From contig CATNEN010000034.1 in the NCBI GenBank assembly GCA_950097015.1, forward strand, positions 6,944,001-7,008,000: a stretch of 64,000 nucleotides of DNA, given 5' to 3'. Below, piece by piece: positions 3,467-62,027 of the stretch; positions within the stretch are counted from its first letter, which is position 1, and every line of letters starts with the position of its first letter. The position numbers and the translations under genes were made by a program. The notes under the pieces are model-generated. The model was not told the DNA's origin. It did no database searches and saw only the letters and a list, made by a program, of their open reading frames with translations. This DNA is from Macrostomum hystrix (taxonomy: Eukaryota; Animalia; Platyhelminthes).

Positions 3467-5587
3467 ATGCTGTCCTGCCCGTTCCTGAACCATCTGCCCA
3501 GCGGCCTGATCCAGTCGCGGCCTTGGTCCCTGCTGCGCTTTGCCCAACGCTGCCCCGTCATTGGCAAGCACATCCAGCGAGCCATGACCACCGGGGACCA
3601 GCTAGCGTCTCTGCCGCAGCTGCAGCATCAGCAGCAGTCGGCCTCTCTGCCTCCGCCGCCGCCTCCGCCTTCGCAGGTGCCGCAGCAGAAGCAGGTTGAG
3701 AAGTGCTCAACTAAATCTGCCGCTCCTTCTGGCCACTGTCCGTTTCTTAGCGGCCGCCTTGACGCCGCTGATGCCGCCGTCTGCGGCCTGTCGCCGCCCA
3801 GCCAGTGTCCGTACAGCCGCATGGCCGGCCGGCCCCTCACCGTCTGCTGCATGGCCGAGGAGCGACCGAGCCCTCAGCCGGCGGCTTCGTCCGAGCTGGC
3901 CGCCGCTGTAGCAGCCGCCGCCCCGGCCTATAACTACAAGGCTAAATGCGAGGAACAGCTGCAGCGCAAGCGAGCCGATCACAGCTATCGGGTGTTTCGC
4001 AAGGTCAACAGGCGCGGCCCGAGCTTCCCCCTGGCTGAGGAGCACACCGGCTTCCCTAAGGACATCACAGTATGGTGCAGCAACGACTACCTGGGCATGA
4101 GCTGGCATCCCAGGGTGCAGGAGGCGGTCATTCAGGCCGCCAGGCAGCACGGAGTTGGATCCGGCGGCACGCGCAACATATCGGGCAACACCATTCACCA
4201 TGAGGCTCTGGAGGCAGAACTGGCCGACTGGCACGGCAAGGAGGCCGCCCTGCTCTTCACCTCTTGCTACGTGGCTAATGAGGCCACGCTGCACACGCTG
4301 GGCCAGCTGCTGCCAGGCTTGGTGTTTCTGTCGGATTCTGGCAATCACGCCAGCATGATTCACGGAATACGGACTAGCGGCTGCCGCAAGGTGAGCTTTT
4401 GCGCCCATAAGCATTGACTAGTGTTCCAGTTTATTCAGTTTTTATTGCTTTTAGGGTTAGTTAAGTCCCGTTTTCTTCCCAGATCCCCAGTGAAGTCCCG
4501 TTTTTTCCCAGACCCCAGTGAAGTCCCGTTTTCTTCCCAGATCCCCAGTGAAGTCCCGTTTTTTCCCAGACCCTAGTGAAGTCCCGTTTTCTTACCAGAT
4601 CCCCAATGAAGTCCCGTTTTTTCCCAGACCCCAGTAAGTGTCCCGTTTTATTCCCAGACCCCAGTGAAGTCCCGTTTTCTTCCAAGATCCCCAGTGAAGT
4701 CCCGTTTTATTCCCAAATCCCCAATTAAATCCTGTCTTAACATCCCTAATAAATGAAACACTTATTTCATTCCTCAGATAATTTTCCCGCACAACAATGT
4801 CAACCGTCTGCGCGAGGAGCTGCTGAAGCTGCCACGCGAGGCGCCCAAACTGGTAGCATTTGAGACCGTCCACTCCATGACTGGCGACATCAGCCCGCTG
4901 GGCGATCTGTGCAGCCTGGCCCACCAATTCGGCGCGCTGAACTACGTAGACGAAGTGCACGCCGTCGGCATGTACGGCAGCCAGGGCGCCGGTGTCGGCG
5001 AGCGGGACAACTGCCTGCCCAGCATGGACCTCATCAGCGGCACCCTTGGCAAGGCCATCGGCAACATCGGCGGCTACGTCGCTGGCGACGCCACCGTCAT
5101 CGACGCCATTCGCAGCTACGCCAGCGGCTTCATCTTCACTACCAGCCTGCCGCCGACTGTGCTAGCCGGGGCTCGGGCCTCCCTGGCCGTACTGCGCTCG
5201 GCCGAAGGCGTCGAGCTTCGCCAGCGTCACCAGGCCTCCGTCCGGTTGCTCAGAGACGCCCTGCAGTCCCGCGGCCTACCGGTGATCCCGGCGCCCAGTC
5301 ACATCATACCGCTGCACGTTGGCGATCCGCAGGTTGCTCAGGCCATCTCCGAGCACATGATGCACAAGTGCGGCGCCTACATTCAGGCCATTAATTATCC
5401 CACGGTTGCTAGGGGCGACGAGCGGCTCCGCCTGGCCCCGACTCCGCATCATACCCAGCCCATGATTGAGCGCCTGGCCAACCAGCTGGCTGAAGCCTTT
5501 CGCCTGGAGGGCTCGCACCTTCTGGAGCCCGCCGCCTTATCGGCTGGAGCTCCGCCTCTGTGTCAGCAGCTGGGCATGGCGGCTTGA
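3467..5587 (+). CDS. ALAS: 5-aminolevulinate synthase (mitochondrial, PLP-dependent). Exons 3467-4390 and 4778-5587, 577 aa; possible 9-aa N-terminal extension from 2500-2516
   Basis: Motifs VWCSNDYLGMS, GSGGTRNISG, LFTSCYVAN, SDSGNHASMIHGI, VAFETVHSM, VDEVHAVGMYG, SGTLGKA (PLP lysine), FIFTTSLPP, QAINYPTV and LRLAPTPHH; N-terminal CP heme-regulatory motifs. The phase-0 GT-AG intron 4391-4777 restores ...GCRK|IIFPHNNV. Confidence 0.97.
4455..4735. repeat. About 31-bp minisatellite (CCCCAGTGAAGTCCCGTTTTCTTCCCAGAT-like) filling the ALAS coding intron
   Basis: Directly visible and confined between donor 4391 and acceptor 4777. Confidence 0.9.
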
Positions 5588-10545: not shown

Positions 10546-13437
10546 CAGAACAACCCCTACAAGAACTGCATGCCAACTGTGTGGCCAGGGAACAATTCGA
10601 AGAAAAGGTGAGAGTCCTTAAAAACCTGAGGCGCAGATACAATAGGCTTTTGGCTGCTCATAAGAGATCTAAGAAAAGTGCTAAGGCCATTGAAATCCTG
10701 CGTCGGACGGTACAGAGCAAGTACAGAAAAATTCGATCTCTGCGCTCAAAGCACAGGCAAATTAAACAGAGAGCCAAAACATTGAAGGACGCAATTCTGG
10801 ATCTAAAGGCCAAGTGCATTTTAAACGAAGCTGCAGCATCTCGATTGAATTTCTTGACCTCCGATTCACTGCTGAGCAGCATCGTGCCTTGCAATAGAAA
10901 AAGGACAAAGAGGTTCTCTGACGAAGTGCGCAAATTCGCCTCTGCATTGAATTTCTATAGTCCAAAGGCTTATGAGTATGTACGAAAGTACTTTCAGCTT
11001 CCGCATCCTGCGTCACTTAGAAAATGGCTCTCAAATGCAAAGTGCTTTCCAGGGTTTTGCGATCAGGCTTTCCAGGAACTTTCGCGGCGACGCAGCTCCA
11101 CTGACGGCCAAGCCTTTGACTACTGCAACGTTGTTGCTGATGAAATGTCGCTGGAGTCGATGATTGAATGGAATTCAAGCGAAGGTATGTTTTTGGCTAC
11201 GTTGACAAAGGTGAAGGCAAACCAAGTGATCAGGAGGCATCTTCGGCACTGGTAGTGATGGCAGTGGGGCTTAAGAGCTATTGGAAGCTGCCTTTAGGGT
11301 ATTTTCTAGTGAATGGAGTTGACGGCGAATTTCTTTCGAGCGTTGCAGAGGAATCCATTCAGCGACTGTACCAGGTTGGCGTCATAGCAACATCATTCAC
11401 ATGCGATGGAACTCTGCACAACATTCGAGCGATCGAACTCCTTGGCTCCAGGATAAGTTCTCCGAACGAGGTCGTCGCCTGCTTCCCGCACCCCTGCGAT
11501 CCTAGCATTTAGGTTGCAGCCTTCCTGGATGTGCCTCACATGTTAAAGCTGATTCGCAATCAGTGGCAGTCACTGGGAAGATTTGTTTGGCCGAACAGAG
11601 GAAATATTGAATGGAAATATGTTTCCATGTTGCAGCAAGTACAAGAAAGTCATGGACTCCGACTTGGAAACAAGTTAAGCAGGCATCAACTTTGCTAATT
11701 TAAAGATGAAGGTCTATTTGGCATCACAACTGTTTAGCAAGTCAGTGGCCGACTCTTTGCGATGGGTGCATCAGCAAGGTGTGATCGGATTTGAGCACTC
11801 TGATGTGCTAGTCACCGCAGATTTCGTTGAGCACATGAATGATTTGTTCGACGCTTTCAATTCCAAGCGGCTGGTCAGTTATGGCGCCAAAATGGCTCTT
11901 AGAGCTGACAATCAGTCGGATTGGATCGGTTTCTTCTCTAGCTCGATCGAACTTCTCTGTAGCCGGCTGCTACTCCGGCTGGCTGCAAGATAGTAGAAAC
12001 CGCAAAGAAGACTTCCTAGGCTTCATCACCAACTGCCATGGCATTATGGAGCTCGCTTACTTACTTTGCAGGGGGGCCTGGGGCACTTGACGCACAAACA
12101 CAGGAACGGCATGCCCCCAGGCCGGCGAACTAGGCGAGAGCCGCCCATCGCGCCGCCTCCCCTGAGCAGGCACCTCACACACACAGCAGCAAGCCAAGCG
12201 GGGAAGGGGGCGGCAGCCGGAGTGCCTCTCACCCCAGGCCCGCACACGCACAGAGCAGACCAAGCCGGGGCGGAAGGCTGATAGAAATCAGTCCTCAGGG
12301 GGGGGGGCGGGTGACGAGTGTACACTTTATCCAATCGCGCTGACGGAAATCCAGATGAGCGCGCGGCGGTGTACACCCGCCCCCCAGCCACCCCCCCGCA
12401 AGGTCTAACGCCCCAGCGCCAACGCACAAGCTCAAACAACGCAGAACAGGCACACAGAAGGTAGGAGCGAAGCTATTTTTCAAGCTTTGATTGCACGAAA
12501 TAAGGTGCACCTCCGCCGGTCGCTACTGTCCAAACCCCCCCAACAAGTCCCGAAATTAATCGTGACCTGAAGGGTGAATCGAACTAGCGTCCTTTGGAGT
12601 GCGAGGCAGCGACGTTAGCCCGTGACCCCCCTCGCCCCTTTATGGAGCTCGCTAAGTATTTATTTTCAACTGGCGAAGTCTTCTTTCTTTGCACTTACAA
12701 GCTTTCGCAGGATTTTCTCGAACTGTTTTTTAATGCAGTAAGGCTACGAAATGGCTGGAACCATAACCCAACGCCCACGAAATTTCGCTCAGCATTCAGG
12801 CAGCTGTTGGTGCATGCCGGAGGTGGAATTCTACAGTCCGTGAGTCCGAATGTGAGGCAGCAGGATGCCACTATTCAGTTATCATTGTCTTGTCTGCCAT
12901 CATCATCAGGGACAGCAGCCATGGAAGCAGATGAAAGCTCAAAATGAAATGGGACTGAGTCTGGGTTCAATCCAACACTGCAAGAATGCATCGGTGTGTG
13001 AAATTTGCCAGTCCATCGTGTGCTATATCGCAGGCGCGGTCTTCCGAAGAATGATGAAAGCAGTTGAATGTGCTCCGTGCAGGTCAGCTCTGATCGCAAG
13101 CTCTGAGACGCCAGGAGCTTCACGCGGACCATGCTCACTCGTTGCCATAAAAAATGTTTTGAACAAGAAAGGAACTGGCGGCCTGATTTTTCCTAGCAGC
13201 AATGTCCTGTGGGTGCTGCTCAATGCAGAGACTGTTGTTCGGCGTGCCAGCTACTGCAGCAGCGGATTCTCTAGTGCTGTAGCTGTTGAGGAGATTCTGC
13301 GCATGTCAATCGATCTGTTCCCTGAACTGGACTCTCATTCGGCATCCGCGAGTATCAGCATTGAGTCTCACAAGCTGCATTTGATTCGAGTAATGGCTAT
13401 GCTTTATAAAAAATATTCGAATGAAGAAGCTGGCTAA
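10546..13437 (+). mobile_element. Decayed P-element/THAP9-like DDE transposase (several frameshifts, stop at about 11510, SINE insertion; no THAP domain or TIRs found)
   Basis: Motifs across ORFs 10581-11255, 11168-11512, 11706-11993, 11839-12090, 12594-12947 and 12865-13437: FYSPKAYEYVR..LPHPASLRKW, VADEMSL, WKLPLGYF, FTCDG, LDVPHMLKLIRN, KMKVYLASQLFSKSVA, MNDLFDAFNS, TYKLSQDFLELFFNAVR..GWNHNPT, YIAG..CAPC, GGLIFPS. Confidence 0.9.
12058..12639 (-). mobile_element. tRNA-derived SINE-like insertion (about 582 bp) inside the transposase, with a 14-bp TSD
   Basis: TTATGGAGCTCGCT is duplicated at 12044-12057 and 12640-12653. Minus-strand B-box GTTCGATTC lies about 55 nt from the 5' end, and there is an (AAGT)n-like tail. 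Removal restores CHGIMELA|KYLFSTGEV. Confidence 0.8.
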
Positions 13438-56700: not shown

Positions 56701-57432
56701 TCAAGCCCAGCACGTTTTAGTAGTGACTGTCGGCCCCGCTATCCAATGATCTCCTTGACCAATGACGCAGCTTGTTTACAAAAATATACCCCGCTATTTC
56801 GATTGTCCAATTTCGTCGATGTCGCTATTCGCCGCTTTACACAGCCTACTTGCTGCCAGTAGCTAGCTTGGAGTGTAAGAGATGCATGTGTTTGAGAAAT
56901 ATGTCTCCGTGTTAGCACGGGGCCGGCTTATCCATGAGCGCATTGCTTGAAACCACTTTGAAAGAATCAATTAATTCTGCCGAATGAGAGAATCTATTAA
57001 TTATGTTGAATGAGAGAATCTATTTATTCGTCCCATAGTAAATGGAAGTAATTATTTCAGAGTTTTACTACAATTGTCACCGATCTTGTGGTTTCTCCAT
57101 TGAGTGAAGAGCGAATTACCTCCACTAGAATGTATCAAAGCAATACATAGGCGTCAAAATCAAGCAACTGCGTATCTGACAGCAGACATAAAAGATAAGG
57201 GACTAAAACTGCGCTTGAAAAACAAGCCAGCAAAGTGCTTGTCGATGACAGGCGTGACAGGCCATGGGCGGCGTGAGTGTCCGAGACCGCGTCACCTGCA
57301 GCAGCTCAGCCAGTCCATAAATGAGACCTCAGCGACCGACTGAAGCAGCCCAATCATCACAGTCAACACACAGTCGTGTCCTCAGCTCCGCATCAGCGCC
57401 AAAGCACTCTCGCAATCCACAGCACAGCAGCC

Positions 57433-57720
57433 ATGTACAAGCTGATCTGCCTGTTCGCTCTCGTGGCCTTCGCTGCCGCCTCTTACACCCCTGAGCAGAG
57501 GAATGAGGTCGTGAACGACATCATCCACGAGATGGTTCCCGTGCTCAGCATCGACACCAACTGCCTGCTGCAGAACGGCGTCAGCTCCATCACCTGCCTG
57601 GTCAGCAACCTGATCACCTGCTTCTTCTCCCACGGCACCAACATCAGCGGACTGGCCGGCTGCCTGGCCAGCAAGTGCGGCGGCAGCGCCATCCAGATCA
57701 TCGGCTGCATCAAGCTGTAA
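57433..57720 (+). CDS. Orphan small secreted six-cysteine protein, 95 aa, single exon
   Basis: ATG in good context (gcagccATG); signal peptide MYKLICLFALVAFAAA; strong C/G-ending codon bias; 6 Cys in the mature part; AATAAA at 57790. Confidence 0.85.
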   Translation: MYKLICLFALVAFAAASYTPEQRNEVVNDIIHEMVPVLSIDTNCLLQNGVSSITCLVSNLITCFFSHGTNISGLAGCLASKCGGSAIQIIGCIKL

Positions 57721-58613
57721 ATTTCCTACTGGCAGAGCTTCCTACTGACACATCAGAACACATTTTCTGATGTGTTCAAACCGAAACGAAATAAAAAAGT
57801 GACACTATTTGCATGCTGCATTGGTCTTGAATATTTTATTTCGAATGGACTATCGTCATTAGGCAATGAAGGTCACGAGTTCGAACTTCGAACTTCTCAA
57901 ATGCTCCTCAATGTGCACATGTGTGCACAAAACTAGACCGAAGAACTCAAAGCCTGCTTGTTGGCAAACGAGAAAGTAGAAAGTAGAAAGACTCCTGATT
58001 GAAAAAACTTCGTGCATCAGCGATTCTAGATTACAGCCATTCTACAGGTCTCATGAATGTTTGTTGATTCTGTTGCCAACCAGAATGACTGACAGGGCCT
58101 AAAAATATCAGCCCGGGGGCAATAAAAAACTGCTTTTATTAACGAGACTTTGTTCCACACACACCTGAGAGCGATAATGGACTTCCATTTGCCGTTGGGC
58201 CATCAAGGTTCAGGCATGGTTTCATTCAGGGAGCTAAATTTCGCTTTCCATCGCTCAGAAAATTTCCCAATGCCAAAAATAACACCCCTATTACGAAGTT
58301 TTTCTTTATTAGCAACATTCCGAGCCAGCTATTGTCCCACAATAAAAAATTCTCTCAACCGCAAGGATGAGCCAAGCCACGCAGAGACAACAGGAAACCG
58401 AGCCTAGGTCCTCCGCTAATAGGCCTGCCATGATGGGAGGCGGTCTGCTCAGGCTAGGAGGTATATTGGTAAACAAAAGCGGAAATATTCACTTCTCTCC
58501 TAGTCAGTTGATACTTTCCACATCGCATCCAGCAGCTTATTCTGTGTTTTTAAGGTGGGCAATAGACGCCAGCATATCTGAACATTAGAATATTTGAACT
58601 TCTAGGGTGAGAA

Positions 58614-59059
58614 ATGATTTCGCTAGGAGCCAAAGGCTGGCTGCCGCTGACAGCAATCCTGCTCGCAGGCCTCCTGGCTGAGCAGCTGGCAGCCAAGCCG
58701 ATGAGTGAAGTCAGCGCAGCTCACTTGGAAGAAGCGGAGGAAAGGCAGGCTGATTCGCAGCACCAGCAGCTGCAGCAGCAACAGCAAAACCTGCCGGAGA
58801 AGGAGACGTTCATGGAGAAAGCTGCAAACAAACGAAATCGCGACGGTCTGGACGAGCAGAAGGCCCGCCTGATGTCCAGCCTGCTTAACAGCCTTCGGTG
58901 GGCTGGGCACATGAGGTGAGCTGTTTTAAGGAAATTAACTTGCATGGCTTTCTTAAAAAACTAGCTAATTACTAATTTTGACCGAAATCTCGAATATCTT
59001 TATGGTTCGTTAAAAGAGAATGCTTTGCTCCATTTGATTTTTTCAGATTCGGTCGCTGA
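58614..59059 (+). CDS. Prepro-RFamide neuropeptide, 104 aa. Exons 58614-58915 and 59047-59059; predicted NRDGLDEQKARLMSSLLNSLRWAGHMRF-amide
   Basis: Signal peptide MISLGAKGWLPLTAILLAGLLAEQLAA; acidic Gln-rich spacer; KR site. Donor AG|gtgag at 58915 and acceptor tttcag|A at 59047 give R-F-G-R-stop (amidation signal). AATAAA at 59150. Confidence 0.88.
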
Positions 59060-59453
59060 AGAACCCGGCAGTTACCGGCTCAGGCTGAGCAGTTGGGCAA
59101 CTTCTGAACTTGTTTTTTAAGCCTCAGTAATCATGAATACGCCCAGTAGAATAAAACTGCAGCGAAATTGCTGTGTCTGTGAGCTTTAGATATTGTGCAA
59201 CTCAATGGCAGCTCCTTTTCTCCGTATTTTTGAAAACAAAAATCTTTTCAGTGAAGACTGAAGGTTGCTGAAGTATATTCTAGTTTACGCATGCTAATCT
59301 GAATGCTAAGCTGAAGTTTACATTTTGACGATTAAAAATCCAAATGGATTAAAAAAAGAATAGTTTCGTTTTCGTGTCTTTGAAACGACACTTAAAAGTT
59401 AAAGCAATTTTCGGGCAGCAGATGGTCTTCGGTGAGCAAATTTGTTGACATGT

Positions 59454-62027
59454 TCAAAGCAAGACGCAAGACTTCAGCTTCTCCTGGAGATCCTCATCAG
59501 CGACGGCCACCTCCGTTCTGTCCGCGCTGGTCTCAGTGATGGTCTCATCTCTGTCGCCTCCTTGTTGGCTTGACTCGCTTCTGGCTTGAGCGGCCTGCAT
59601 GAGCCGGATGTCCTCCTGGGTGACGGCGGCCCCCGCCAGGGCGGCGTTCTGCCGCTGCTCCTCGGCCAGCGCAGTCCAGAATGTGGAGGCGGGCGGGAAG
59701 CCGATGAAGCCGTACACCCGCTGGTGGCCCTTGAAAGCGTAGCTGTGTTGCAGGCTGAGGTTCACGGTGCAGCTGAGGTCCTCCTTGCCATCCAGGCGCC
59801 TCTGCCGGGTGTTGACGTGCTTCCTCACGTACGAGTTCATCGCGTGCAGCAGCCTGTCCAGGAACTTGATGTCTGTCTGCGGTGATCGCGAGTCCGAGGC
59901 GTGCGCCGGATGCTGCACTGAGCCGAAGCCCAGCAACGGCTGCTCCTGATGCGGGATGAGCACAAAGTCCTCGAAGATGTCGAAGTCTCCCCTCTGCTGG
60001 CGAGCTGGCTTCCGACCAGGAGAGGCGAGCTCCGGCGGCGGGTTCCGGCGGGTCACCAGCAGCTCCGGCATCTGGACCAGCTGCAGCTTCCGCCTGACGT
60101 TCTTCTCATACAGGTTGGACGCCAGGCGCGGGTCCTTGTCGCTGGGGCTGGAGCTCTCCTTGGAGTAGGTCCAGAACTCGGTCACGTAGCTCTTGTCTGG
60201 CCAGTTGGGGATCGCGCAGCTGTTTTTCTTCTGGCGCTCACCGGGTTTGACTGGCGGATTGCAGACCTCGAAGATCTCCAGGTATCTGGCAGGATCAGGC
60301 ACGATGATGTACGCGAAGAATGCCGGGAATGCATTGGTTCGGTACTTGCCGTAGGGCATCTGCAGCGTGCAGTGGTTGAGGTTGTAGCTCAGCACGATGT
60401 CTGTTGCCGCCTTGACAAGGTCTTTGCGCTCTGTTGCGTCCAGACAGTCGTAGAGCTGCTTATGGAACTTGTAGTGCAGCAGGAACCTGGGCAGGCAGTG
60501 CACCATATCGAATCGCACCGTGAAGCTGTCGTTTTTTCTGTGTGCGAACAAAAGGTCGTAGTACCTAGCAGGTCTGTCCATTGGGCTACTGGTACTACTT
60601 CCATCTTTCCTCTCACAGCATTCGCATGGATATCGTTCTTCACTTCCGTCCACAGTGTCTTGACGGAGCTCTTCTCGAAACCTATCTCGCGCTGCTTGCT
60701 CTTCTGGGCTAAGCGCGTCGGAAGTTGGGGGTGCCACCAGGCCACACAGACTGAGCAGCTGGGCTTTGCGCGCCTTCTCCTGCTCCGATTGCCTCTGAAC
60801 CTCCGTGGGATTTTCGAGCGACTCCTTTTTGATCGGCCTAATAAATCTATCAATACGCAGGTTGAAATCGACCGTATCAGATCCCACCTTTGACTGGTGC
60901 GTATTACCGGTAGTCTTTAGCGCCTCGCCATTTTCATTTATGCCTGAGTTGCTTTCGTCGTCTTCTCGAATGACCATGCCGTCAGGCCGGTCCAGTCCAG
61001 CACCTCCGGTACGTCCAGCGAGACTGCGCCAGTCGTCAGCAACGCTAGGCCCAACGCTTTTGGATTTCCTCTTGACCAACCAGGCGAATTCGTAGTCGTC
61101 AACGCTTTCACCTGTCGCATGTGGATGCTTGGACCTCTGCTTGTGCTGAAGGTTGCGATCTTGCAGCTGCAGCTGCTCATGCCTAGCGAGGCGGAACAGT
61201 TGCTGACTTGGCAGTAATCCGGAGTCGTGATCCTCTCTGGCCTGAACGCATGGATCCATCGGTAATTCAACGTTGCCTTGTTCGTCTGTCACCTGCCCCA
61301 CACGGTCCTCGTGAAAGAAGTTCTTTACGTGCTTTTTTAGCGACCCGAGTACGTTCGTTTTCTTTTTCTGTTCATTCTTGGTTATCTGGATGCTTTGCGA
61401 GAGGATCCTAGAGAAGTCGATCGTCTGCACGCGCTCGGTAGTTGGGGCGAAAATGTCTTCATCTGCTACTGAGGTATCACTTTGTTCTGTCGCAGAGGCG
61501 CTCGACATCTCGTCTGCTTTCGAGATTGAGAAATCTTCAGAAACTTTCTCGCCCTTTCTTTCACCATCCTTCGACAAAGATTGTGATGAGCCGGTTTGTT
61601 TGACCAACTCCGATGGCCCTAGAACTGAAGCTCGGGCTGCATTGGACTGCGAGCTTCGAATGCTCGCTGCGCTGGGTGTGCGAGATTCGATGCGAGTAGC
61701 TTGCGACACTGTTGAAGTGGGGTGCGATTCGGCACTTCCAAAACTGCGCCGCGAATGTGCCTTACTTCCTGGAACCTTTAAGTACAAATCGCTTCTGCTT
61801 ACAGCCAACGATTCAACCTTTTTTGTTAAATCACTTTGGCTTGGAAGCTGGGTAATTGACGCTGTTCCGACATTGCCTGGCGGCCGCAAGCTCTGCGTTC
61901 CGCTGGTTGACCGCTGGCCAAGCAGTCCGATGGCCGATGCCGCCCTATGCTGAAGGCGCGGCCCAGTTGGCGAGGTCCTGATGCCAATGGACGACGCTGA
62001 GCATTTGTTAATCTCTGGAGAGAGCAT
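59454..62027 (-). CDS. Uncharacterised 857-aa single-exon protein: Ser/Thr-rich disordered N-half and globular C-terminal about 300 aa (possibly tandem HIT-like)
   Basis: 2574-nt uninterrupted, non-repetitive ORF starting at ATG; strong C/G third-position bias in the 3' half; no family recognised with confidence. Confidence 0.8.
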   Translation of the reverse strand: MLSPEINKCSASSIGIRTSPTGPRLQHRAASAIGLLGQRSTSGTQSLRPPGNVGTASITQLPSQSDLTKKVESLAVSRSDLYLKVPGSKAHSRRSFGSAESHPTSTVSQATRIESRTPSAASIRSSQSNAARASVLGPSELVKQTGSSQSLSKDGERKGEKVSEDFSISKADEMSSASATEQSDTSVADEDIFAPTTERVQTIDFSRILSQSIQITKNEQKKKTNVLGSLKKHVKNFFHEDRVGQVTDEQGNVELPMDPCVQAREDHDSGLLPSQQLFRLARHEQLQLQDRNLQHKQRSKHPHATGESVDDYEFAWLVKRKSKSVGPSVADDWRSLAGRTGGAGLDRPDGMVIREDDESNSGINENGEALKTTGNTHQSKVGSDTVDFNLRIDRFIRPIKKESLENPTEVQRQSEQEKARKAQLLSLCGLVAPPTSDALSPEEQAARDRFREELRQDTVDGSEERYPCECCERKDGSSTSSPMDRPARYYDLLFAHRKNDSFTVRFDMVHCLPRFLLHYKFHKQLYDCLDATERKDLVKAATDIVLSYNLNHCTLQMPYGKYRTNAFPAFFAYIIVPDPARYLEIFEVCNPPVKPGERQKKNSCAIPNWPDKSYVTEFWTYSKESSSPSDKDPRLASNLYEKNVRRKLQLVQMPELLVTRRNPPPELASPGRKPARQQRGDFDIFEDFVLIPHQEQPLLGFGSVQHPAHASDSRSPQTDIKFLDRLLHAMNSYVRKHVNTRQRRLDGKEDLSCTVNLSLQHSYAFKGHQRVYGFIGFPPASTFWTALAEEQRQNAALAGAAVTQEDIRLMQAAQARSESSQQGGDRDETITETSADRTEVAVADEDLQEKLKSCVLL

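What the first reader, a model, noticed from the sequence alone, without database searches (positions are those of the whole stretch)
58614..59059. Cryptic RFamide: sulfakinin-like GHMRF-amide end on an NPY/NPF-type gene structure
The amidated end exists only after splicing: ...WAGHM-AG|A-TTC-GGT-CGC-TGA. A phase-2 intron inside the Arg codon of the terminal RF/RY-amide is a known hallmark of NPY/NPF genes. The 28-aa product has an amphipathic helix (LMSSLLNSL) and an AGxxRF end resembling nematode NPF-type FLP-34 peptides (..NNAGRLRY-amide). Yet GHMRF-amide is the arthropod sulfakinin signature (DYGHMRF-amide), here lacking the sulfatable Tyr. Unlike canonical NPF it lacks RPRF and follows a long acidic spacer instead of the signal peptide. 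It may be a new divergent NPF/sNPF/PrRP-type subfamily or a convergent sulfakinin mimic. A monobasic cut could also release WAGHMRF-amide.
Basis: partly seen in the sequence, partly recalled or inferred. Interest (0 to 1): 0.8.

Follow-up and report, generated by a model that had tools for sequence, protein, structure and literature searches.

The report
Conserved Macrostomum long RFamide neuropeptide gene
This is a real, spliced and expressed flatworm (Macrostomum) gene for a secreted precursor of one 28-residue amidated RF-amide peptide; its gene layout matches neuropeptide Y/F genes, its sequence does not, and its likeness to insect sulfakinin is a species-specific coincidence.

Summary
The ORF at 58614-58915, the 131-nt GT..AG intron and the 13-nt last exon (A-TTC-GGT-CGC-TGA) are all there. 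Contigs from four public runs in two studies carry exactly the 58915|59047 junction and no intron-retaining form.

The gene is single-copy in this 220-Mb genome. It has a syntenic orthologue in Macrostomum lignano, deposited as a "hypothetical protein". That orthologue has the same phase-2 intron in the Arg codon, a dibasic site at the same place and a 28-residue peptide: ...DEQRAKLMSSLLNSLRWSGQMRF-G-R. The spacer has diverged while the peptide is under purifying selection.

The His of "GHMRF" is Gln in M. lignano and neither peptide contains a Tyr, so the sulfakinin reading fails.

The NPY/NPF link rests on gene structure, size, a predicted helix, Gly at -5 and the RF-amide end. It fails on RxRF, on Tyr-10/Tyr-17 and on the Pfam NPY profile, which does recognise this genome's ordinary NPFs.

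Best reading: a strongly derived offshoot of the expanded flatworm NPY/NPF family (about 0.5). The rival is an unrelated Macrostomum RFamide (about 0.3). The scan has already noted other odd NPF-like genes (RIRM- and RIRF-amide) elsewhere in this genome. I found no published description, but two key flatworm papers were not readable.

The parts
58506..58613 (+). 5' UTR. RNA contigs begin at 58506-58508, and a TATA-like GGTATATTGG lies about 40 nt upstream.
58614..58694 (+). Signal peptide, residues 1-27 (MISLGAKGWLPLTAILLAGLLAEQLAA). The predicted cut aligns with A-S-A|R in M. lignano.
   Evidence: helix 5-26 in the orthologue model
58695..58829 (+). Acidic, Gln-rich spacer (residues 28-72). 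It is poorly conserved and contains a CAG repeat at 58757-58794.
58830..58835 (+). Dibasic cleavage site K73-R74, aligned with R-R in M. lignano.
58836..58915 (+). First 26 residues of the peptide (NRDGLDEQKARLMSSLLNSLRWAGHM) plus the first two bases (AG) of the Arg codon. This is the end of exon 1.
58916..59046 (+). Phase-2 intron of 131 nt (gtgagc...ttttcag), absent from all RNA contigs.
59047..59059 (+). Coding part of the last exon: third base of the Arg codon, Phe, Gly (amide donor), Arg, TGA.
59060..59198 (+). 3' UTR with AATAAA at 59150. Contigs of X3, X4 and X1 end at 59195-59198.

Best explanation
This is a two-exon gene of a Macrostomum flatworm encoding a 104-residue prepropeptide. 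The parts, in order, are a signal peptide, a fast-evolving acidic/Gln-rich spacer, a dibasic KR site, one 28-residue peptide, a Gly amide donor, Arg and the stop. A prohormone convertase would cut after KR. Carboxypeptidase would remove the final Arg, and PAM would convert the Gly into a C-terminal amide. The product would be NRDGLDEQKARLMSSLLNSLRWAGHMRF-amide, a largely helical amphipathic peptide with an x-M-R-F-amide end that should act on a GPCR. The gene and its splicing are shown; the processing and the receptor are inferred. Its most likely origin is the expanded flatworm NPY/NPF family. It keeps that family's hallmark phase-2 intron in the penultimate Arg codon, the single long helical peptide at the precursor's end, Gly at -5 and the RF-amide. 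It has lost Arg-4/Pro-3 and the helix tyrosines. My confidence that it is a real conserved amidated-peptide precursor is about 0.93. My confidence that it derives from NPY/NPF is about 0.5.
For: The junction is seen in RNA-derived contigs from 2 studies. The gene is single-copy. There is a syntenic M. lignano orthologue with the same intron position and phase, the same dibasic site and the same 28-residue length. In the last 22 codons of exon 1, 12 are identical, 6 differ synonymously and 4 differ conservatively, while the spacer is barely alignable. An AF2 model of the orthologue puts a helix on residues 70-93 at pLDDT about 80. The hydrophobic moment of RLMSSLLNSLRWAG is 0.57, reached by 2.4% of shuffles. 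The NPY/NPF intron is defined as lying between nt 2 and 3 of the Arg codon of the terminal RF/RY, and it is kept in 10 of 11 planarian npy genes. This genome also holds a canonical RPRY gene with the same predicted intron (L020). A spacer plus KR before the peptide also occurs in Smed-NPY-10 and in L018. C-anchored similarity to 12 NPFs of this genome is weakly above shuffles (p about 0.025).
Against: The peptide lacks the RxRF end (H/Q-M stands in place of R-P). It lacks Tyr-10 and Tyr-17 (Ser and Leu instead) and has no Pro. Pfam Hormone_3 (PF00159) scores this genome's ordinary NPFs at E 2e-17, 1e-28 and 2.6e-4, but gives nothing for this protein or for the full M. lignano protein at E<=10. 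hhalign of the two orthologues against 12 NPFs of this genome scores 2.96, no better than column shuffles. AG|R is a natural proto-splice site, so independent intron gain in an AGR Arg codon is possible. No receptor or peptide data exist.
Confidence: 0.55

Rival explanations
1. It is a Macrostomum- or flatworm-specific long RFamide precursor unrelated to NPY/NPF. On this view the intron in the Arg codon was gained independently at an AG|R proto-splice site.
For: No sequence-level similarity to NPFs is detectable: Pfam PF00159 is silent and hhalign equals shuffles. The RxRF end and the Tyr-10/-17 hallmarks are absent. phmmer against 1.84 billion representatives finds only the M. lignano orthologue.
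Against: The exact position and phase match the NPY/NPF hallmark intron. The layout is the same: one long helical peptide, then Gly, then a basic residue at the precursor's end. Flatworm NPY families are large and already include odd ends, such as npy-11 RPRL. Earlier scan notes, untested here, report RIRM- and RIRF-amide genes with the same intron in this genome.
Confidence: 0.3
2. It is a sulfakinin/CCK-type peptide, or a functional mimic of one, acting through a CCK/SK-type receptor.
For: The last five residues, GHMRF-amide, equal the arthropod sulfakinin end. HMRFamide occurs in the literature only in sulfakinin papers. The language-model feature search lists a gastrin/CCK cluster among many other prohormone clusters, at 0.88, which is only a lead.
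Against: The orthologue reads GQMRF, so the His is not conserved. Neither 28-mer contains a Tyr, so no sulfation site exists. The product is a single 28-residue helical peptide rather than short DY-containing copies. There is no Pfam Gastrin match. Whether a CCK/SK-type receptor exists in this genome was not tested.
Confidence: 0.02
3. The main bioactive product is the short heptapeptide WAGHMRF-amide, released by a monobasic cut after Arg95. That would make the gene a single-copy FLP-type (xMRF-amide) gene.
For: The Arg before Trp is conserved in both species. xMRF-amide ends are typical of short FMRFamide-like peptides (own knowledge).
Against: There is no basic residue at P4, P6 or P8 of that Arg, which the usual rule for monobasic sites expects (own knowledge). 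LMSSLLNSL upstream of it is 100% conserved with only synonymous changes, which suggests the long form is the selected unit. The dibasic site and the 28-residue length are conserved.
Confidence: 0.1

Closest known systems
Flatworm NPY/NPF family (Schmidtea mediterranea npy-1 to npy-11; Moniezia NPF; the canonical NPFs of this genome at L011, L015, L017, L018, L020)
   Same: Phase-2 intron between nt 2 and 3 of the penultimate Arg codon. One long (about 28-40 aa) helical peptide ending R-F-amide, followed by Gly plus a basic residue at the end of a small precursor. Gly at -5. Some members likewise have a spacer plus KR before the peptide (Smed-NPY-10, L018).
   Different: H/Q-M replaces R-P at -4/-3. 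There are no Tyr at -10/-17 and no Pro. It is not recognised by Pfam PF00159 or by profile comparison with this genome's NPFs.
Macrostomum lignano PAA48789.1 / PAA50541.1 (BOX15_Mlig011138g1/g3/g4; UniRef auto-name 'Pro-FMRFamide-related neuropeptide FF')
   Same: Syntenic orthologue with the same two-exon structure, the same intron phase and position, a dibasic site at the same place and a 28-residue peptide. In an ungapped alignment the last 23 peptide residues match 19/23, and the four differences are conservative.
   Different: 36-41% identity overall. The spacer is Pro-rich rather than Gln-rich. The end is SGQMRF rather than AGHMRF. The intron is 64 nt rather than 131 nt. It is deposited only as a hypothetical protein, and its automatic NPFF name has no Pfam support.
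Arthropod sulfakinins (…DY(SO3)GHMRF-amide)
   Same: An identical last five residues in this species only.
   Different: No Tyr or sulfation site, and the His is not conserved in the sister species. The peptide is long and helical, present as a single copy, with a different precursor layout.
Nematode FLP-34 (NPY/NPF-type, …NNAGRLRY-amide) and sNPF/PrRP-type peptides
   Same: All have an RF/RY-amide end.
   Different: FLP-34 keeps the RxR motif. sNPF/PrRP genes have a phase-1 intron in the N-terminal or central part of the peptide, not this one.

Membership tests
NPY/NPF | Intron between the 2nd and 3rd nucleotide of the Arg codon of the C-terminal RF/RY (Mair 2000, as quoted in PMC7314547; Collins 2010) | tested here: met
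   AG|gt...ag|A in the sequence. The junction is seen in RNA contigs and is the same in M. lignano. Definition.
NPY/NPF | C-terminal RxR[FY]-amide (flatworm: GRPRF-amide) | tested here: not met
   The end is G-H-M-R-F-G-R here and G-Q-M-R-F-G-R in M. lignano. Gly-5, Arg-2, Phe-1 and the amide donor are present. Arg-4 and Pro-3 are absent.
NPY/NPF | Tyr at -10 and -17 from the C-terminus (flatworm NPF hallmark, PMC10783048) | tested here: not met
   Ser at -10 and Leu at -17 in both species. Definition.
NPY/NPF | Match to the Pfam Hormone_3 (PF00159) profile | tested here: not met
   No hit at E<=10 for exon 1 or for the full M. lignano protein. Controls from the same genome hit at 2.3e-17, 1.3e-28 and 2.6e-4. 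hhalign against 12 NPFs of this genome equals shuffles.
NPY/NPF | Single peptide of about 28-40 residues with a C-terminal amphipathic helix | tested here: met
   28 residues in both species. Hydrophobic moment 0.57. AF2 helix 70-93 in the orthologue. Both are predictions only.
NPY/NPF | Peptide follows the signal peptide directly | tested here: not met
   A 45-residue spacer plus KR precedes it. The feature is not strict within flatworms: Smed-NPY-10 and L018 also have a spacer plus KR.
NPY/NPF | Activates an NPY/NPF-type GPCR | not testable with these tools
   This needs receptor assays.
Sulfakinin/CCK | Sulfatable Tyr next to the C-terminal G-H-M-R-F-amide (DYGHMRF-amide) | tested here: not met
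   Neither 28-mer contains a Tyr.
Sulfakinin/CCK | Conservation of the HMRF-amide end among orthologues | tested here: not met
   M. lignano has GQMRF.
Sulfakinin/CCK | Match to Pfam Gastrin (PF00918) | tested here: not met
   No hit.
sNPF/PrRP | Phase-1 intron in the N-terminal or central part of the peptide-coding region | tested here: not met
   The only intron is phase 2, in the penultimate Arg codon. Definition.
NPFF/FMRFamide-related (UniRef automatic name of the orthologue) | PQRF-amide end; match to Pfam NPFF (PF15085) | tested here: not met
   The end is H/Q-M-R-F. There is no Pfam hit at E<=10.

The most novel reading that the evidence does not exclude
The gene founds a separate, so far undescribed family of long RFamide peptides in Macrostomorpha. 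It would have arisen from an NPY/NPF gene and then exchanged the RxRF pharmacophore for an xMRF-amide one. It would therefore signal through a different receptor (FLP-type, or a private member of the expanded NPYR-like set) than canonical NPFs. That would be a natural case of ligand re-targeting inside the flatworm NPY expansion.
Probability: 0.25. Interest if true: 0.55.

Novelty: new variant of a known kind. Interest (0 to 1): 0.4.

Why it matters
Flatworms carry unusually large NPY/NPF ligand and receptor families: 11 ligands and 16 receptors in planarians, and NPY-8/NPYR-1 controls germline maturation there. A conserved, expressed peptide that keeps the NPY-type gene structure but has lost the residues used to recognise the family shows how far members can drift. 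It also shows that motif- or profile-based neuropeptide surveys will miss such genes. It gives Macrostomum, a genetic model flatworm, a defined orphan peptide to pair with a receptor. Its relevance beyond flatworm neuropeptide biology is modest.

Tried and rejected
- **Word-index search:** the search with exon 1 found nothing. Repeating it with the peptide end of P0001 found only P0001 itself.
- **Paralogues in this genome:** the DNA and protein searches gave only CAG-repeat or low-complexity hits, so there is no paralogue.
- **Pfam:** only sub-threshold noise, such as Unstab_antitox.
- **ESM-Atlas feature search:** it returned a mix of unrelated prohormone clusters (Frey, DH31, PDH, gastrin, UTS2B, NPFF, NPF, QRFP) at 0.86-0.90, with recognition below the useful level. 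It says "small prohormone-like" and no more.
- **Literature:** no paper holds GHMRF together with flatworm except sulfakinin reviews, and none holds GQMRF, LLNSLRW or Mlig011138. Collins 2010 supplements contain no MRFG prohormone. McVeigh 2009 and Koziol 2016, the main flatworm neuropeptide catalogues, are not held, so prior description there cannot be excluded.
- **Alternative donor:** an in-frame donor CG|GTGG at 58897 would give ...LLNSLRF-G-R. It is not used in the RNA contigs and is not conserved in M. lignano, so I rejected it.
- Exon 1 was searched by reference, and exon 2 (4 codons) is too short to search.
- **Receptor:** I did not look for a CCK/SK-type receptor in this genome.

Full report

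Yes. The + strand carries an ATG at 58614 and a 101-codon frame. Read through, that frame ends ...WAGHMR-stop.

The last codon straddles a consensus donor, CAC ATG AG|gtgagc, at 58915|58916. A polypyrimidine tract and acceptor, ttttcag|A, lie at 59046|59047. They are followed by TTC GGT CGC TGA. Spliced, the frame therefore ends H-M-R-F-G-R-stop.

There is no ATG in the 108 nt between the transcript start and the initiator. An in-frame TGA sits two codons upstream of the initiator.

Read laying put contigs of four public runs from two studies on the stretch:
- Three runs (X2-X4) give contigs identical to the window that run 58506/58508-58913 and continue at 59045, skipping 131 nt with GT..AG ends. 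Two bases fit on either side of the joint, so the junction is 58915|59047.
- X1, from another study, shows the same joint.
- No contig covers the intron.

The genome holds this sequence once, with the intron. The intron-less form is therefore transcript-derived. The contigs of X3, X4 and X1 end at 59195-59198, downstream of an AATAAA at 59150.

**2. What organism, and is the gene conserved?**

phmmer of exon 1 against 1.84 billion representatives gave a single hit, P0001 (E 3.5e-5). This is Macrostomum lignano PAA48789.1, a "hypothetical protein". A near-identical copy, P0002, exists, and UniRef automatically names both "Pro-FMRFamide-related neuropeptide FF".

Its locus (L021) is syntenic with the window:
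- Upstream small secreted Cys-rich protein: 83% identical.
- Convergent 850/857-residue protein downstream: 63% identical.

The window therefore comes from a Macrostomum species other than M. lignano, with a 220-Mb genome.

The M. lignano gene has the same structure: CAG ATG AG|gtgaac...gtttcag|A TTT GGC CGC TGA. The intron is 64 nt, and the deposited protein ends QMRFGR.

| Feature | This window | M. lignano |
|---|---|---|
| Signal-peptide cut | LAA\|KP | ASA\|RP |
| Dibasic site | KR | RR |
| Peptide | NRDGLDEQKARLMSSLLNSLRWAGHMRF | TVENPDEQRAKLMSSLLNSLRWSGQMRF |
| Peptide length | 28 | 28 |
| Intron length | 131 nt | 64 nt |

The spacer is barely alignable. In the last 22 codons of exon 1, 12 are identical, 6 differ synonymously and 4 differ conservatively: two K/R swaps, A/S and H/Q. 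A diverged spacer next to a constrained peptide is the usual signature of a neuropeptide precursor.

**3. How it most likely works**

Shown so far are the gene, its splicing, its expression and its conservation. The following steps are inferred:
- Signal-peptide removal after residue 27.
- Prohormone-convertase cleavage after K73-R74.
- Removal of the terminal Arg by a carboxypeptidase.
- Conversion of Gly to the amide by PAM.

The product would be a 28-residue RF-amide. In this species a further cut after the K-R-N-R stretch could trim two residues. That site is not conserved.

The peptide is predicted to be helical and amphipathic:
- The AF2 single-sequence model of the orthologue has a helix over residues 70-93 at pLDDT about 80.
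- The hydrophobic moment of RLMSSLLNSLRWAG is 0.57, reached by 2.4% of shuffles.

A heptapeptide released at the conserved Arg before Trp is possible but unlikely to be the main product. The invariant LMSSLLNSL lies upstream of that Arg, and no basic residue sits at P4/P6/P8.

**4. Comparison with known families**

*NPY/NPF.* The defining intron lies between nt 2 and 3 of the Arg codon of the terminal RF/RY (PMC7314547). It is kept in 10 of 11 planarian npy genes (PMC2953531). It is present here and in M. lignano.

This genome has many ordinary NPFs. Following earlier scan notes, I fetched two intronless multi-copy precursors (L011). From those I found further members: L015, L017, L018, L019, and L020, an RPRY gene with the same predicted phase-2 intron. 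A spacer plus KR before the peptide occurs in L018 and in Smed-NPY-10, so the spacer is no argument against membership.

The sequence tests, however, fail:
- H/Q-M stands in place of R-P.
- Ser and Leu stand where flatworm NPFs have Tyr-10 and Tyr-17 (motif as given in PMC10783048).
- Pfam PF00159 scores the genome's own NPFs at 2.3e-17, 1.3e-28 and 2.6e-4, but gives nothing for this protein or the full orthologue at E<=10.
- hhalign against 12 NPFs of this genome is no better than shuffled columns.
- A C-anchored BLOSUM comparison is only weakly above shuffles (p about 0.025).

Descent from an NPF gene is therefore an inference from gene structure and layout. I give it about 0.5.

*Sulfakinin/CCK.* The GHMRF identity is confined to this species (GQMRF in M. 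lignano). No Tyr exists in either peptide, the architecture differs, and Pfam Gastrin is silent. I reject this reading.

*sNPF/PrRP.* These genes have a phase-1 intron elsewhere in the peptide. Not met.

*NPFF.* This is only the orthologue's automatic UniRef name. The peptide has no PQRF end and there is no PF15085 hit. Not met.

**5. Novelty**

No paper in the searchable library holds either peptide. Collins 2010 lists no MRFG prohormone. The M. lignano protein is deposited only as hypothetical.

McVeigh 2009 and Koziol 2016 could not be read, so an earlier name cannot be excluded.

Earlier notes of this scan, which I did not test, report other odd NPF-like genes in the same genome: RIRM-amide and RIRF-amide ends with the same intron. 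This gene therefore looks like one more, and more extreme, derived member of a family known to be large in flatworms. That makes it a new variant of a known kind.

**6. Limits**

- Exon 1 was searched by reference, and exon 2 (4 codons) is too short to search.
- The runs are contigs, so they give no expression level or strand.
- Peptide processing and the receptor are untested.
- Whether a CCK/SK-type receptor exists in this genome was not examined.

**Verdict:** Interest is 0.4.

Noticed in passing
window 57376-57720 (+), likely start at the second Met, about 57433: A small secreted Cys-rich protein (MYKLICLFALVAFAAA|SYTPEQ...) with no Pfam family. It is 83% identical to the gene in the same position in M. 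lignano.
   Followed up: partly
window 59454-62027 (-): An 857-residue protein encoded in one open frame, with no Pfam family, 63% identical to its M. lignano orthologue. Its 3' end converges on the neuropeptide gene, and RNA contigs of the two genes touch around 59200-59290.
   Followed up: partly
window 58757-58794: The CAG/Gln repeat in the spacer attracts many short contigs from unrelated transcripts (90-95% alike). This produces a depth spike in all runs that says nothing about this gene.
   Followed up: yes
window 58897-58898: An in-frame alternative donor, CG|GTGG, would yield ...LLNSLRF-G-R with the same acceptor. It is not seen in the RNA contigs and is not conserved in M. lignano (CGATGG).
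   Followed up: yes
window 3467-5587 and 10581-11255: Exons of a 5-aminolevulinate synthase (Preseq_ALAS plus Aminotran_1_2) and a P-element-transposase-like fragment (Tnp_P_element HTH, RNase H N-terminal).
   Followed up: no
L018 (G000:C7:6425484-6425654), L019 (C1:8082632-8082763), L020 (C41:2343989-2344108), L015 (C38:10193169), L017 (C5:5302711): Further NPF/NPY genes of this genome. L018 is a single NPF after a spacer plus KR, ending RPRFG-stop. L015 and L017 are two-copy intronless precursors. L020 is an RPRY gene with a predicted 88-nt phase-2 intron. In L019 the read-through ...LVGRPRY is not followed by Gly, which suggests an intron there as well.
   Followed up: partly
P0001/P0002 (M. 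lignano): UniRef's automatic name, 'Pro-FMRFamide-related neuropeptide FF', has no support from Pfam NPFF or from the C-terminal motif. The gene is present in at least three or four near-identical copies in the M. lignano assembly (g1, g3, g4).
   Followed up: partly
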